In this document: piece by piece, positions 1-51,737 of the stretch
Layout: every line of letters starts with the position of its first letter
Position numbering within the stretch: the first letter of the stretch is position 1
NCBI GenBank assembly: GCA_053919585.1
Contig: CM132819.1
Source of the DNA: Euprymna scolopes
Lineage: Eukaryota
Strand: one strand, 5' to 3'
DNA: 64,000 nucleotides
The notes under the pieces: model-generated
Seen by the model: the letters and a program-made list of their open reading frames with translations, nothing else
Told to the model about the DNA's origin: nothing
Database searches by the model: none
Position numbers and translations under genes: made by a program

Positions 1-650
1 AAAATATCATTACTGTGACCTAAATACCTCCTTATCGATAGTCTGCATGATTTTCATGTTCTCAGACAAAAAAATAAAGAGAAAAGAAAAAAAGTATATC
101 AAATCTACGAAGGGTCGAAACGGCATTGAACCCATTACGACAACGCAGAGCAGCAACAGGAATACTTAAATGGATTCTGACTACGACAAGGGATTACAAC
201 TCAAAATTACTCGTATTTTTCTTCTCGAGAGAGATAAAATAAATTCTCAATTTTTCTTTGTTCTCAGTGAGAAATGGAATAGTTTTTTTTCTGTTAAAAC
301 CACAAATATGTAACTTTTTTGCTTCGTGCATGTTTACTTTCCATATCTTCTCCGTAAAGTCGACGTTTTTCTGTTTAGCATCGTTTACCAACATTTGTCT
401 TGTAAGTCTATTTATTTTTTCAACATAGAACAGCTTTCAAAGCAACTACTTAAAATGATCCCTTTGCAGAAAACGCGGGTTTCAAAATTACAGAAACAAA
501 GAGAAGGTTAAAGACGAGAATGAGAAAGAAAAGAATAAATCGAAAGAAGTGAAGGAAAGAAGCGGGAGGAGGAGAAAAATAAAAAGAAAAGCTTAAAAAA
601 GGTGAAAGAAGAAAAAGAGAAGCGACAAAAGAGTACAAGAAGCAGAAAGA

Positions 651-3854: not shown

Positions 3855-3915
3855 ACTTTTAATCCGCGGAGTTTCGAAGAAATACGTTCTTTCTCATCAG
3901 TGGCGAGGATTTAGC
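3855..3915 (-). ncRNA. Degenerate minimal hammerhead-ribozyme-like motif (Penelope-type terminus)
   Basis: Minus strand reads aatcctcgcca CTGATGA gaaagaacgtatttcttc GAAA ctccgcggatta. Both core boxes are present and stem II is imperfect; the stem III/NUH register is ambiguous. Confidence 0.5.
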
Positions 3916-26410: not shown

Positions 26411-26455
26411 GTGTTGACTGCAGTACAGACGGTCGCGTATCAATCCTGGCTTGAG

Positions 26456-26523
26456 GTAGTTTCCTGTCTAGCCGCGCTGATGAGCTATAAAAATGCGAAA
26501 TACTTCTGTATGCGGTTGACTAT
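26456..26523 (+). ncRNA. Type I hammerhead ribozyme, copy 1 (catalytic core intact)
   Basis: gtagtt-tcctgtct-agccgcg CTGATGA gc-tataaaaat-gc GAAA tacttct GTA tgcggtt-gactat. Stem I agccgcg/tgcggtt is extended by gtagtt/gactat across an internal loop, stems II and III are short, and cleavage is predicted after A26510. Confidence 0.8.
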
Positions 26524-26738
26524 AATGCTCCTAATCTCGAATTGATCATATTGAGAAGTGATACACGAATTACCATTAGCGTATAAACGATGCTCTATGT
26601 ACAAAAAAATTAAGCTTAGGTAGTTCGGACGATGTCAAAACATCGTCAAACTCACGACTCACACAGCAACCGCCGATAGTGTTGTGGTTTGGAGCCTTGA
26701 CTGTCGTACAGACGGTCGAGTTACAAGCCTGGCTTGAG

Positions 26739-26800
26739 GTAGTTGCCTGTTTAGCCGCACTGATTATCTGTGAAACAGCGAAACAGTACTATATGTGGAT

Positions 26801-26806
<6 letters not shown>
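26739..26806 (+). ncRNA. Type I hammerhead ribozyme, copy 2 (core mutated)
   Basis: agccgca CTGATTA tctg-tgaaa-cagc GAAA cagtactATA tgtggat. G8 is changed to T, but stem II (ctg/cag) and the palindromic stem III (acagtact) are better preserved than in copy 1. It lies 283 bp downstream of copy 1 in a ~110-bp direct repeat (26414-26523 vs 26697-26806). Confidence 0.75.
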
Positions 26807-26869
<63 letters not shown>

Positions 26870-26959
26870 TGAGTGTTACTTCTTGGCAGAAGAAGACCAT
26901 GGTTCCCTTTTTTATAAAGTATATACACATATATACACTTATACACACATACATATATA

Positions 26960-29110
26960 CATGTGGGGATGTGATCAAGATGCATCAATTCCTATTTCCT
27001 GTGGGAGCGAAGGTGGCTCTTCAGACCACCCTGCTCTTACACAGTGTATTGCAAAGGGCACACTAAGCTGTAATTGAGGGATGCCAACTGGTGCTGCCGT
27101 ACTCTGGACGCTCATATGAGGCTTCAGGTCTCCACTCGATTTACAGACCACAGCGCAAACAGAACATCTGTGTCCTGCAATGTTATCCCCATCAAAGAAA
27201 AATTGATCTCCATGTGTACGCTTTTGTTTAGCTAGGCCAGCTCCGGATAAAGTAATTTTACCGCATAAATCTCAGGTGTGGTTCTGCATGAAATCCTCCG
27301 ACATACCTATATCTGACCGATTTTTCTTCCGGATGTCACGTTCATTTTTTGCGTGCTCATACTTTTTTTATTCTCAAAACTATCACAGCCATGATAGACC
27401 AAGGAGCGCCACTTTTTACAATCATTGGAAGCACTTTCCCAACTGAACACGTCAATACCAAGAGCTTTAAGATTATCTTTGATGTTATCCTTAAAGCATT
27501 TCCTCGGTTTATGTTGTGGACGTTTTCTTGTGTAATTTCACCATAGAACATGCGCTTTGGCAATCCATCGTCGTCCATCCTTGCCAGATGTCCAGCCCAC
27601 CTCATCTGATTGCGTATAATCAATTTCTCGATACATCAGCTCACATGAGAAAATCCATATCAGGTATAAGAGTACTCCACCAGATACCCAGAATGTGTTT
27701 CAGGAATTTCTGCTACACTCTCTCCATGACTTTTATGTGTCTACCAAAAGTTGTCCATGCCTCAGAAGCGTAAAGTAATGGTAAAATACAAGATTGATAG
27801 ACAGTGATCTTTGTATGAATAGTTATACAGCTATGAGGCCTACTCGCTTCTCTAAGCCACCAAAAGCCTTAGGGTTCCATCTCTGGCGAGAGTACTACCC
27901 AAATACACAAATGTGTCAACCGAAAACAGATCCATGATACACTCTCACCACGGGCCACGAGATCGGCGTCATCCGCATAAAGCAATTAACGAACCGGGTG
28001 CTGAAAGGTTCTTGTAGAAGCATGAAAACGACGAAGATCAAATACCCTTCCTGTGGTTCTGAAACGCAAATAAACACCTAGAGAACATTCCCTAAAGGCC
28101 TACGATAACATAGTTGCAAAATAAATTGAAAAAAGTGTAGGTGCTAGGATATAACCCTGCTATACACCATTTTCGACAGAAATGGGTTCCGCTAGGCATC
28201 CGTTGAAGTTCGGGCGAGCCGTCATATTAATGTGGAGCTCCCTGAGTAATCGTAGAAATTGAGGTGGGCATCCCAAATTCCCCAGAATTATCCATAGGGC
28301 ACTACAGTTCAAACGCCTTAGTCAAATCAACAAAAACATGATAAAGCGGAACACGGTGTTCAGTACATTTCGCCTTCAACTGCCAAGCAGAGAAGATCAT
28401 GTCCGAGGTTCTTCTGCCCGGACGAAAGCTACTTTGGCTTTCTGGAATGACAGATGGACAAATATACTTTAACAATCTATTGATTTGAACTCTGGAAAAT
28501 ACTTTATCAACTGCTTCCAACAAACTTTTCTCACGACAACTTCCACAGTTGTTCCTGAGCCACTTTCCCTTGTACAGTGATATAAGAATTGCATCAACCC
28601 AATCCTGATGGACAGGAACACCCTTCCAGACATCAGTGATAAGATGAACAATTTCATGAACAAGTTTATCACCCCGATGTAAGAGGACTTCCACAGGAAT
28701 ACCATCAAGCCCTGGAACCTCCCAACGTTCACTTCGTTGATTGCATCTCTAATTTAATTTCACAGATGGGAACAGAGACATTTCATGGATACGCTTATGT
28801 TGTGATAAAAATTCATTGATGGCGTCCTCATCAAAGTACGAGGGGTTGTCAAAGGGATCAGAATAATGCTCGGTCCAACGAAGGAGAATCTTGTTAGGAT
28901 CCTTTGAAAGGGCAATTCCATTAAGATGTAGATAGTGTTTGAGGACCAAAAGCTATTTTTAAGACAATGGTACGTTTGAGGTCTTTACAATCAAAAGCCA
29001 TCTGGATTTGGTTTGCGAGGTTAGCCCACCACTGATTCTTCATTTGGCGGAGACGCTTTTAGAGAATACCGTTGTATGCTTTAAGTGACTGTTGGAGGGA
29101 CGCTCGACCT
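26960..29110 (-). mobile_element. 5'-truncated, decayed RTE-clade non-LTR retrotransposon
   Basis: Minus strand: LRQMKNQWWANLANQIQ, RWTEHYS, QDWVDAILISLYKGK..CGSCR..SLL, PESQSSFRPGRRTSDMIF, VFVDLTKAF, LLYADDADL (27985-27960), YLGSTL, RWAGHLARMDDDGLPKRMFYGE, then C2H2 fingers and a stop at 26992. Many frameshifts. Confidence 0.93.
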
Positions 29111-51219: not shown

Positions 51220-51734
51220 TGTCAGGTCATGTCATATGCTACTGGTAACCCAGTCCTACCTGCCTCATGGTCGGGTCACCGGCGACTAAACTGGTTCCCC
51301 CACCAGACTTGTTTGGTGAGAAGGGCGGCTAGTCTCCCTGACGGATTAAAAATAAGACCTCCCAAAGGGCGAATGCACTCTTTTTCTGGGTCAACGGCCA
51401 ACTAGCACCGTGTATATTTGTATTGGGGTAGAAAGGGCTCCCGTAAGCCGTGGTGAAGGCAACCTTTCTAGGAGAAGCAAATCTGATTTAAAAAAAAAAC
51501 ATAAAGCGGAAGACCATTACCCGCATTAAGCTGGTCTGCAGTTTAATTTGTTGCTGGCTATCTTGCTCTTGCTTGTTGCTGGATCTCAACATTTTGAACC
51601 GAGAAAGAGAGACTTAGCTGTCGTACAAAGCTAAGACTCTGTAACATCATATTTGTATAGATACTCCCTCAGACATTTGGGCTCCTGGATTTTAAATGCC
51701 TGAGGGAGTGGCACTCGTCTGACAAGACGTTGCA

Positions 51735-51737
<3 letters not shown>
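51220..51737 (+). mobile_element. Non-coding, highly structured retroelement (RTE 5'-UTR-like / SINE-like) inserted in (TA)n
   Basis: GC-richer island bounded by TA tracts on both sides. It contains aaggcaacctttctaggagaag..tctgatt (RTE 5'-UTR-like) and hairpins at 51301-51318, 51607-51640 and 51663-51709. Confidence 0.6.
51244..51294 (+). ncRNA. Candidate minimal (P4-less) HDV-like ribozyme
   Basis: P1 ggtaacc/ggtcacc (one A.C mismatch), P2 cagt/actg, P3 acc/ggt closing loop tgcctcat, P1.1 cc/gg, and J4/2 ctaa, in the nested double-pseudoknot order. Confidence 0.5.

What the first reader, a model, noticed from the sequence alone, without database searches (positions are those of the whole stretch)
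26414..26806. Tandem type I hammerhead ribozymes 283 bp apart: candidate retrozyme / circular-RNA-producing unit
Seen: a ~110-bp direct repeat (26414-26523, 26697-26806), each copy ending in a hammerhead. Their consensus is agccgca CTGATGA gctg-tgaaa-cagc GAAA cagtact GTA tgcgg, with a palindromic stem III (acagtactgt) and a stem I extended across an internal loop. Copy 1 keeps every core residue, and the unit has no ORF. Established: animal non-LTR retrozymes and Penelope-like-element pLTRs carry tandem minimal type I hammerheads with palindromic stem III that cleave as dimers, and retrozymes yield monomer-length linear and circular RNAs. Inference: this is a member of a ~283-nt self-cleaving, non-coding mobile RNA family. 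This genomic pair is diverged and may itself be dead.
Basis: partly seen in the sequence, partly recalled or inferred. Interest (0 to 1): 0.82.

Follow-up and report, generated by a model that had tools for sequence, protein, structure and literature searches.

The report
Dead copy of hammerhead retrozyme family
This is one old, mutated insertion of a non-coding mobile element present in thousands of copies, whose 283-base unit carries a self-cleaving hammerhead ribozyme; the element type is already known in animals, so the find is real but not new in kind.

Summary
Window 26414-26524 and 26697-26807 are a direct repeat (80% identical, 283 nt apart), and each copy ends in a type I hammerhead motif.

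The family has thousands of first-look candidates on many chromosomes of this 5.9-Gb animal genome. Insertions span 0.84-2.5 head-to-tail units. The 3' end is fixed, 13 nt past the predicted cut, and (TA)n follows it in 51 of 55 sampled loci. The 5' end varies. There is no ORF and no target-site duplication.

Intact copies have the full catalytic core, a 5-bp helix I with a 3-bp extension, a 4-bp helix II and a loop-less palindromic helix III. Folding predicts that this helix III pairs between two ribozyme copies (a double hammerhead).

A degenerate tRNA-like segment with an A box lies just upstream of each ribozyme. A young, abundant Penelope-like element (RT plus GIY-YIG) that also ends in (TA)n is present in the genome, but it shares no sequence with the unit.

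Best reading: a non-LTR retrozyme, resembling the Schistosoma Sm-alpha SINE, probably mobilised by Penelope-like elements. The window copy is dead: helix II is broken in copy 1, and copy 2 has G8 changed to U. Circular RNA and cleavage are untested. Earlier notes from this scan report similar elements elsewhere in this genome.

The parts
26416..26523 (+). 5'-truncated upstream unit (unit positions about 176-283). It holds the B-box-like part of the tRNA-like segment (about 26431-26449) and hammerhead copy 1.
   Evidence: BLAST against a multimer of the unit places the element at L001 1503-1894, which is window 26416-26807. Sequence read.
26466..26520 (+). Hammerhead copy 1. Core CUGAUGA, GAAA and GUA are intact. 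Helix I has 5/5 pairs and its extension 3/3, but helix II has only 2/4 and helix III 3/5. The predicted cut after 26510 is probably no longer functional.
   Evidence: Descriptor check. Sequence. The minimum-energy fold does not form the ribozyme.
26524..26806 (+). One complete 283-nt unit: body, then tRNA-like segment, then hammerhead. It ends at the family's fixed 3' end (...ACTAT).
   Evidence: GC content is 42%.
26669..26741 (+). Degenerate tRNA-like segment. The A-box-like site at 26677-26687 has 2 mismatches to TRGCNNAGTGG. The B-box/T-arm-like site at 26714-26729 differs from the family sequence at 3 positions.
   Evidence: The family majority sequence carries an exact A box, retained in 25 of 55 copies. 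ARAGORN accepts a cloverleaf only at relaxed thresholds, in 1-2 of 7 copies. There is no Rfam tRNA hit.
26749..26803 (+). Hammerhead copy 2. The core is broken (CUGAUUA, so G8 is U; G10.1 is also U). Helix III has 4/5 pairs. The former cut site is after 26793.
26804..26867 (.). (TA)32 microsatellite abutting the element's 3' end. It is either the insertion target or the element's tail.
   Evidence: TRF. The same junction is present in 51 of 55 sampled family copies.

Best explanation
Window 26416-26807 is a single old insertion (1.39 units) of a dispersed, non-coding retroelement family with a 283-nt unit. Each unit reads body (about 145 nt), degenerate tRNA-like segment with A- and B-box-like motifs (about 75 nt), then a type I hammerhead ribozyme (about 55 nt).

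The proposed life cycle is as follows.
1. A copy, or a tandem of copies, is transcribed into RNA that spans at least two hammerheads. Transcription may start from the internal tRNA-like Pol III-type promoter. The ancestral unit has no T4 terminator on this strand.
2. The two ribozymes pair through their palindromic helix III (ACAGUACUGU) to form a double hammerhead. [quoted passage not shown]
3. A host RtcB-type ligase closes the monomer into a circle.
4. A reverse transcriptase supplied in trans, most likely from a (TA)n-targeting Penelope-like element, starts at the UAUA just 3' of the ribozyme on a nicked (TA)n target. It copies around the circle or multimer for 0.8-2.5 turns.
5. The result is an insertion with a fixed 3' end, precise internal unit junctions and a variable 5' end.

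Shown here: the family, its anatomy, its insertion pattern, the ribozyme motif, the predicted dimer fold, and the co-resident young PLE.

Inferred: transcription by Pol III, cleavage, circularisation, and the identity of the reverse transcriptase.

The window copy itself is inactive. Both of its ribozymes are damaged, its A and B boxes are mutated, and its upstream partial unit starts after the A box. It probably could never have served as a Pol III source copy for a full monomer.
For: Family and copy number:
- 41 matches over nearly the full query at 85-88% identity, from 5515 first-look candidates on at least 29 contigs.
- 2964 candidates with the body alone.

Insertion pattern:
- The 3' end is fixed at ...GGATGACTAT in most copies, and (TA)n follows in 51 of 55 loci; 25 of 55 also have (TA)n upstream.
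- 5' ends are spread over unit positions 110-283 in the body-selected sample, and lengths range from 0.84 to 2.47 units.
- In the copies read, the internal unit junction is ...GACTAT|AATGC... without an inserted (TA)n tract.
- 5 of 30 copies are exactly one unit, lying between (TA)n runs.

Ribozyme:
- 31 of 47 ungapped instances pass a strict descriptor: CUGANGA, GAA, A15.1-U16.1, H17 not G, and helices I, II and III.
- The two-strand cofold gives -38.6 kcal/mol against 2 x -14.7 for monomers, with a 10-bp intermolecular helix III.
- In the unconstrained minimum-energy fold of a 389-nt intact insertion, the two helix III segments pair with each other.
- The monomer RNA folds better than shuffled sequence (z = -2.76).

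Other features:
- No ORF. GC content 44%.
- An exact A box (TRGCNNAGTGG) in the majority sequence. Only 6 of 55 units contain TTTT on this strand.
- A second family in the flanks shows the same tRNA-like-then-hammerhead order, and there Rfam Hammerhead_1 scores 45 and 36.8 bits against a cut-off of 34.

PLE in the same genome:
- An ORF with RVT_1 then GIY-YIG, up to 808 aa; 15,396 first-look candidates; copies 97-99% identical; ends in (TA)n.

Literature:
- Metazoan non-LTR retrozymes and their proposed life cycle (PMC7229834).
- Dimeric action of hammerheads with a palindromic helix III (PMC4209133).
- Insertion of PLEs into (TA)n (PMC8557442).
- Retrozymes as PLE derivatives (bioRxiv 10.64898/2026.07.22.740005).
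Against: - No Rfam hammerhead model reaches its gathering score on this family. The best is Hammerhead_3, a partial match at 22.4 bits against 48.5.
- All copies descend from one sequence, so there is no covariation within the family.
- PolyA RNA-seq reads laid on an intact copy show no pile-up of read ends at either predicted cut site. About 270 reads per run cross from the 3' end into (TA)n, which is what read-through of genomic copies gives. PolyA selection would lose small circles, so this is weak evidence.
- The abundant PLE shares no sequence with the unit in the 3.25 kb held around its endonuclease domain, and its last roughly 600 nt give no Rfam hammerhead hit. The partner is therefore unidentified.
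- The tRNA-like segment fails ARAGORN on the majority sequence and fails Rfam tRNA.
Confidence: 0.72

Rival explanations
1. It is a conventional tRNA-derived SINE. Pol III transcribes it and a LINE with a microsatellite-type tail copies it. The hammerhead is a passenger, as in Schistosoma Sm-alpha, and no circular RNA is involved. Lengths above one unit would arise because the source genes are themselves tandem.
For: A- and B-box-like motifs lie in every unit. There is a constant 3' end with a simple-repeat tail, and 30 of 55 copies have (TA)n only on the 3' side. 5' truncation is typical of target-primed reverse transcription. The tRNA first-look count is huge at 506,012, which suggests many tRNA-related repeats.
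Against: The tRNA-like part is internal, not at the 5' end, and no 5' end pile-up marks a transcription start. Lengths reach 2.5 units with exact unit junctions in the copies read. Each round from a linear source could only shorten copies, so the tandem state would need constant regeneration. Nearby or abutting inverted copies (6 of 55 loci; L022 head-to-head, L037 across a (TA)n run) and the (TA)n association match PLE behaviour, and the resident PLE ends the same way. No LINE with a (TA)n tail was looked for.
Confidence: 0.13
2. It is a remnant pseudo-LTR of an autonomous Penelope-like element: a solo terminal repeat or a deletion derivative, rather than an independent non-autonomous family.
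For: PLE pseudo-LTRs carry hammerheads and arise as partial tandems. PLEs are very abundant here and also end in (TA)n (PMC4209133; PMC8557442).
Against: None of the 55 sampled loci (each with 1.5 kb on either side) nor the 64-kb window encodes the PLE ORF by tblastn. blastn finds no similarity between the unit and the 30 PLE loci. The 283-nt unit repeats as a self-contained period.
Confidence: 0.07
3. It is a short satellite or segmental tandem duplication generated at the DNA level, and the hammerhead-like string has no function.
For: The window copy on its own is only a diverged 1.4-unit repeat with broken ribozymes.
Against: There are dispersed copies on many chromosomes with identical 3' boundaries and different flanks. 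TRF sees no array here. A full hammerhead descriptor has a negligible chance expectation, by my estimate below 1e-4 per 64 kb.
Confidence: 0.02

Closest known systems
Metazoan non-LTR retrozymes (Cervera and de la Pena 2020, PMC7229834; Li et al. 2026 preprint 10.64898/2026.07.22.740005)
   Same: A non-coding repeat unit of a few hundred bp with GC below 50%. A type I hammerhead in each unit. Head-to-tail copies. Thousands of dispersed copies. Autonomous PLEs in the same genome. A helix III that calls for dimeric action, as in the amphibian examples.
   Different: Most insertions here are only 1.0-1.6 units, so TRF-based retrozyme pipelines would miss them. The 3' end is fixed 13 nt past the cut site and abuts (TA)n. 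A tRNA-like A/B-box segment sits in each unit. RNA circles have not been shown.
Schistosoma Sm-alpha / Sj-alpha SINE-like elements with hammerhead ribozymes (cited in PMC2770079)
   Same: A tRNA-related segment combined with a type I hammerhead in a short, high-copy, non-coding retroelement.
   Different: In Sm-alpha the tRNA-Gln-like part is clear enough to be called by tRNAscan-SE (PMC2770079). Here neither ARAGORN nor Rfam accepts it. Here the tRNA-like part is internal and the copies are partial multimers ending in (TA)n.
Penelope-like element pseudo-LTR hammerheads (Cervera and de la Pena 2014, PMC4209133; Craig et al. 2021, PMC8557442)
   Same: Partial tandem insertion, occasional inverted partner copies, insertion at (TA)n, and a palindromic helix III.
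   Different: There is no RT/EN ORF between or beside the repeats. The ribozyme has the canonical 4-bp helix II rather than the min-HHR architecture (long helix II, no helix III). There is no sequence similarity to the dominant resident PLE.
Newt satellite 2 and avocado sunblotch viroid double hammerheads (Forster et al. 1988, as cited in PMC4209133)
   Same: Helix III is too weak in a single copy, and two copies pair to form the active double hammerhead.
   Different: Those are long satellite arrays or an infectious RNA. This is a dispersed retroelement.

Membership tests
Hammerhead ribozyme, type I | Catalytic core: C3 U4 G5 A6 N7 G8 A9, G12 A13 A14, the A15.1-U16.1 pair, and H17 not G | tested here: met
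   Met in the family: 31 of 47 ungapped instances pass. In the window, copy 1 keeps the core and copy 2 does not (G8 is U).
Hammerhead ribozyme, type I | Three helices around the core, with helix I open (5' and 3' ends in helix I) | tested here: met
   Helix I is CCGCA/UGUGG plus a GUC/GAC extension. Helix II is GCUG/CAGC. Helix III is ACAGU/ACUGU without a loop. Window copy 1 has only 2/4 helix II pairs.
Hammerhead ribozyme, type I | Match to Rfam Hammerhead_1 (RF00163) at its gathering score | tested here: not met
   No hit at gathering in the window. On an intact copy only a Hammerhead_3 partial match is listed, 22.4 bits against 48.5. A different hammerhead family in the flanks does pass, at 45 and 36.8 bits.
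Hammerhead ribozyme, type I | Self-cleavage after H17 | not testable with these tools
   Needs in vitro transcription. RNA-seq shows no pile-up of ends at the predicted sites, but the libraries are polyA-selected.
Metazoan non-LTR retrozyme | Non-coding head-to-tail repeats of about 150-450 bp, each with a type I hammerhead, with no LTR/PBS/PPT and GC below 50% | tested here: met
   283-nt unit, 0.84-2.47 units per locus, GC 44%, no ORF. PBS and PPT were not looked for.
Metazoan non-LTR retrozyme | [quoted passage not shown] 2026) | tested here: not met
   Not met for the window copy: both motifs are damaged. It is met in other copies, for example L005, L007, L016 and L023.
Metazoan non-LTR retrozyme | Expressed as monomer-length linear and circular RNA | tested here: inconclusive
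   Family reads are present in polyA RNA-seq, but they run into the flanking (TA)n and show no ends at the cut sites. Junction reads cannot distinguish circles from tandem DNA.
Metazoan non-LTR retrozyme | Co-occurrence with autonomous Penelope-like elements | tested here: met
   ORFs with RVT_1 plus GIY-YIG, up to 808 aa, with young copies.
PLE pseudo-LTR remnant | Repeats flank, or are homologous to the termini of, an RT/GIY-YIG ORF | tested here: not met
   tblastn of the PLE ORF finds nothing in 55 loci or in the window. There is no DNA similarity to the 30 PLE loci. Only one PLE family was tested.
tRNA-derived SINE | A recognisable tRNA-derived head with A and B boxes at the 5' end of the element | tested here: inconclusive
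   The A box is exact in the majority sequence and the T-arm is B-box-like. Against this, ARAGORN and Rfam tRNA fail, and the segment is internal with variable element 5' ends.

The most novel reading that the evidence does not exclude
The tRNA-like segment may be a working internal Pol III promoter placed directly upstream of the hammerhead in every unit. Any insertion that retains one promoter ahead of two ribozymes (about 1.5 units or more; 3 of 30 in the unbiased sample) would then be a self-sufficient source of unit-length RNA. Reverse transcription would both begin and end at the UAUA next to the ribozyme on (TA)n targets. That would make this, together with sister families in the same genome, a SINE/retrozyme hybrid that shows how animal retrozymes are transcribed and primed. 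It might also account for part of the 'unclassified' repeat fraction in genomes of this kind.
Probability: 0.3. Interest if true: 0.6.

Novelty: new member of a known kind. Interest (0 to 1): 0.4.

Why it matters
Animal retrozymes are a recently recognised route to abundant small circular RNAs. Neither their promoter nor the enzyme that copies them has been established, and the papers read here do not identify a promoter. This family offers several clean, testable features:
- a fixed 3' end at a UAUA next to the ribozyme;
- (TA)n junctions shared with a young resident Penelope-like element;
- a candidate internal Pol III promoter.

It also shows that most insertions are shorter than two units, so pipelines that begin with a tandem-repeat finder will miss them.

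A conditional point: the genome size, the 46 or more large scaffolds and the RNA-run labels suggest a decapodiform cephalopod. This is my inference and is not verified. If it is right, such elements may lie within the repeat fraction reported as unclassified, in genomes said to have almost no SINEs (PMC13218726).

The window copy itself has no likely function.

Tried and rejected
- Rfam at gathering thresholds on the window: nothing. With E-value thresholds, only sub-threshold hammerhead hits: HH9 at 14.8 bits and Hammerhead_3 at 22.4 bits.
- Covariation analysis within the family: not run. All copies derive from one sequence, so variation is random decay.
- ARAGORN at default settings and Rfam tRNA on the tRNA-like segment: negative. 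ARAGORN at relaxed thresholds accepts 1-2 of 7 copies and rejects the majority sequence.
- Target-site duplication search in the 30 loci without upstream (TA)n: only chance-level matches of 5-8 nt.
- Partner search. GIY-YIG loci gave one dominant PLE family with no similarity to the unit and no Rfam hammerhead in its last roughly 600 nt.
- RNA-seq. I laid reads on L023 without noticing that the locus is stored in reverse orientation. Re-read correctly, the element is 1500-1968 on the minus strand, with predicted cuts at 1514|1513 and 1798|1797. There are no end pile-ups at those places. Many reads run into (TA)n. One abundant unrelated transcript shares 34 nt (1724-1757). The excess of first mates on the minus strand (2-3 fold) cannot be interpreted without knowing the library chemistry. 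No support for, and no evidence against, circles.
The body-selected sample shows a spread.
- TRF does not detect the 1.39-unit repeat.

Full report
**Observation**

The window holds a two-copy direct repeat, 26414-26524 and 26697-26807. It is 111 nt long, 80% identical, and the copies start 283 nt apart (alignment).

Each copy ends in a hammerhead-like string.
- Copy 1 reads CCGCG, CUGAUGA (26477-26483), a helix II region, GAAA (26497-26500), a helix III region, A17 (26510), then UGCGG.
- Copy 2 has CUGAUUA (26760-26766) and A17 at 26793.

A (TA)32 run follows directly at 26804-26867. The unit has no ORF above 44 aa. The 132-aa ORF listed at 26679-27077 only reads through the microsatellite.

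**It is a family**

A search of the window's own assembly (5.9 Gb, 925 contigs) with the 393-nt stretch gave 5515 first-look candidates. Among the 40 that were scored, 41 matches cover nearly the whole query at 85-88% identity, on at least 29 contigs. The 150-nt body alone gave 2964 candidates at 95-98% identity to a younger copy.

After orienting the loci, the 3' part of the family reads the same almost everywhere: CCGCA CUGAUGA GCUG-UGAAA-CAGC GAAA CAGUACUG UA | UGUGG AUGACUAU.

**Ribozyme anatomy**

With standard hammerhead numbering, the family sequence has:
- the full core;
- a 5-bp helix I (one G-U pair) extended by GUC/GAC across a small internal loop;
- a 4-bp helix II with a 5-nt loop;
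- a helix III that is a 10-nt palindrome with no loop (ACAGUACUGU);
- the cleavage triplet GUA.

In a strict descriptor test, 31 of 47 ungapped instances pass.

A single 61-nt ribozyme does not form helix III in its minimum-energy fold. Two copies cofold at -38.6 kcal/mol against 2 x -14.7, with helices I and II in place and a 10-bp intermolecular helix III. In the unconstrained fold of a whole intact 389-nt insertion, the two helix III segments, 283 nt apart, pair with each other.

This is the 'canonical metazoan type I' architecture. Cervera and de la Pena describe it as inactive alone and active as a dimer in tandem repeats (PMC4209133). It is not their minimal PLE variant.

Rfam does not recognise it at curated thresholds. 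The best result is a partial Hammerhead_3 match at 22.4 bits. All copies descend from one sequence, so the family offers no covariation.

A different hammerhead family in the flanks of L002 and L007 has entirely different helix sequences, the same core and another palindromic helix III. It does pass Rfam Hammerhead_1, at 45 and 36.8 bits.

**The window copies are damaged**

Copy 1 keeps the core, but only 2 of 4 helix II pairs and 3 of 5 helix III pairs. Copy 2 has G8 changed to U and G10.1 changed to U.

The two repeats of one insertion should have been identical when made. They are 79.8% identical here, against a median of 92.1% (range 78-99%) in 37 other insertions. This is therefore one of the oldest copies sampled.

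**Insertion pattern**

In 55 non-redundant loci the 3' end is constant (...GGAUGACUAU, 13 nt past the predicted cut). (TA)n follows it in 51 loci, and 25 also have (TA)n upstream. No target-site duplication is detectable where the upstream flank is not (TA)n.

5' ends vary. In the sample chosen by the body alone, they fall anywhere from unit position 110 to 283. Lengths there are 0.84-1.61 units, and up to 2.47 units in the first sample. Five of these 30 copies are exactly one unit between two (TA)n runs.

In the copies read, the internal unit junction is ...GACTAT|AATGC... with no inserted microsatellite.

Six of the 55 loci have an inverted copy within 1.5 kb. These include one head-to-head pair (L022) and one inverted copy just across the 3' (TA)n run (L037). 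L048 shows a similar inverted tail by eye in its flank.

A fixed 3' end, variable 5' ends, lengths above one unit and exact junctions are what target-primed reverse transcription of a circular or multimeric RNA would give. The start site lies beyond the cleavage site. The template was therefore not the linear cleaved monomer.

**tRNA-like segment**

Just upstream of the ribozyme, each unit has about 75 nt with three features:
- an exact A box (TAGCGTAGTGG, fitting TRGCNNAGTGG), retained in 25 of 55 copies;
- a T-arm-like GGGTTTCAATCC;
- no T4 run on this strand in the ancestral unit (6 of 55 units contain TTTT).

ARAGORN accepts a cloverleaf only at relaxed thresholds in 1-2 of 7 copies, and rejects the majority sequence. 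Rfam tRNA gives nothing.

The sister family in the flanks shows the same order, tRNA-like and then hammerhead, with a collinear layout. I treat a Pol III promoter as a reasonable but unproven inference.

The window copy's upstream partial unit starts after the A box. If a Pol III promoter is real, this copy could never have produced a complete monomer.

**The likely helper**

A Pfam GIY-YIG search of the genome gave 15,396 first-look candidates. These are dominated by one family with open frames of up to 808 aa ending about 85 codons after the endonuclease domain. In the 612-aa part held in one locus, RVT_1 is followed by GIY-YIG. This is a canonical C-terminal-EN Penelope-like element.

Copies are 97-99% identical in the 3' region. 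They sit in tandem and inverted arrangements. They end at either of two points 30 nt apart, and (TA)n follows both. This matches published PLE behaviour, including the 30-40-bp tail and the (TA)n bias (PMC8557442).

However, this PLE shares no sequence with the 283-nt unit. Its last roughly 600 nt give no Rfam hammerhead hit. Its ORF is absent from all 55 retrozyme loci and from the window.

The family is therefore not a pseudo-LTR remnant of this PLE, and the actual partner remains unidentified.

**RNA evidence**

Runs labelled as RNA hold the family. I laid two raw polyA RNA-seq runs and two sets of RNA contigs on L023.

L023 is stored in reverse orientation. The element is at 1500-1968 on the minus strand, with predicted cuts at 1514|1513 and 1798|1797.

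- Depth over the element is tens to hundreds of reads, against single digits in the unique flank.
- No begin or end pile-ups occur at the cut sites.
- About 270 reads per run cross the 3' end into (TA)n. This indicates read-through of genomic copies.
- Part of the depth comes from one unrelated transcript that shares 34 nt.

PolyA selection would remove small circles or Pol III RNAs. Junction reads cannot separate circles from tandem DNA. The test is therefore uninformative rather than negative.

The monomer RNA is somewhat more structured than shuffled sequence (z = -2.76 on the ribozyme strand and -1.72 on the other).

**Comparison with known systems**

The element meets the structural definition of metazoan non-LTR retrozymes (PMC7229834). 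It is a few-hundred-bp non-coding head-to-tail unit, each with a type I hammerhead, with low GC, many copies, and PLEs in the same genome.

It resembles Schistosoma Sm-alpha in combining tRNA-related sequence with a hammerhead (PMC2770079). A 2026 preprint argues that animal retrozymes are PLE derivatives (10.64898/2026.07.22.740005).

It differs in three ways:
- insertions are short (mostly fewer than two units), so TRF-first pipelines would miss them;
- the 3' end is fixed at a UAUA next to (TA)n;
- each unit carries an internal tRNA-like segment.

Earlier notes from this scan describe several tRNA-plus-hammerhead elements elsewhere in this genome. This is one of a group already flagged.

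**Verdict**

The finding is a new member of a known kind, and the window copy is a dead insertion. Cleavage, circular RNA, Pol III transcription and the PLE partner remain to be shown.

Noticed in passing
L007:2118-2275 (+) and L002:590-790 (-): A second short element family: a clearer tRNA-like head is followed directly by a type I hammerhead that passes Rfam Hammerhead_1 (36.8 and 45 bits, cut-off 34). Its helix III palindrome is CUCGAG in L002 and decayed to CUCAUG in L007. The L007 copy ends in (TA)n. In L002 a 5S-rRNA-like stretch (503-625, minus strand, 43.7 bits, over cut-off) lies just downstream.
   Followed up: partly
L062-L090 (for example L080, stored reverse; ORF at L080:1417-3252 minus strand): A very abundant young Penelope-like element. 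It has an RVT_1 plus C-terminal GIY-YIG ORF with open frames up to 808 aa, 15,396 first-look GIY-YIG candidates, and copies 97-99% identical. There are two alternative 3' ends 30 nt apart, both abutting (TA)n, and tandem and inverted arrangements. Near its 3' end is a hammerhead-like string with one extra U in the core (CUUGAAGA ... GCCCG/CGGGC GAAAC) that Rfam does not recognise.
   Followed up: partly
window 3872-3900 (-): A CTGATGA ... GAAA string with a possible helix II (GAAAGAA/TTCTTTC-like) and a palindromic TCCGCGGA where helix III would be. It may be another decayed hammerhead element.
   Followed up: no
window 51220-51737: An earlier scan note (s1-259266) flags an HDV-like ribozyme candidate heading a roughly 520-bp non-coding element in (TA)n on this same window. 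I did not examine it.
   Followed up: no
G000:C11:1.68-2.16 Mb: The 61 best Rfam tRNA hits of the genome (64-80 bits) all lie in one region of roughly 0.5 Mb on contig C11, which looks like a large tandem tRNA gene array. The genome-wide first-look tRNA count is 506,012, pointing to massive tRNA-related repeats.
   Followed up: no
L023:1724-1757 (stored orientation): About 240 (X23) and 165 (X24) RNA-seq reads share only this 34-nt piece of the unit body, then continue into one fixed foreign sequence on both sides (agreement 0.99-1.0). This looks like a single well-expressed transcript carrying a fragment of the family or a relative of it.
   Followed up: no
L022 (oriented 1239-1498 minus, abutting 1499-1895 plus); L037 3' flank: Inverted partner copies. 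L022 is head-to-head at the 5' end. In L037 the inverted copy lies just across the 3' (TA)n run; L048 shows a similar inverted tail by eye. These are the complex arrangements described for Penelope-like insertions.
   Followed up: partly
joints 1875-1880 to 1682-1693 of L023: RNA reads and contigs join positions 1875-1880 to positions 1682-1693 of the reference through about 28-40 foreign letters. Relatives with a different unit composition may exist; this needs re-reading in the element's true orientation.
   Followed up: no
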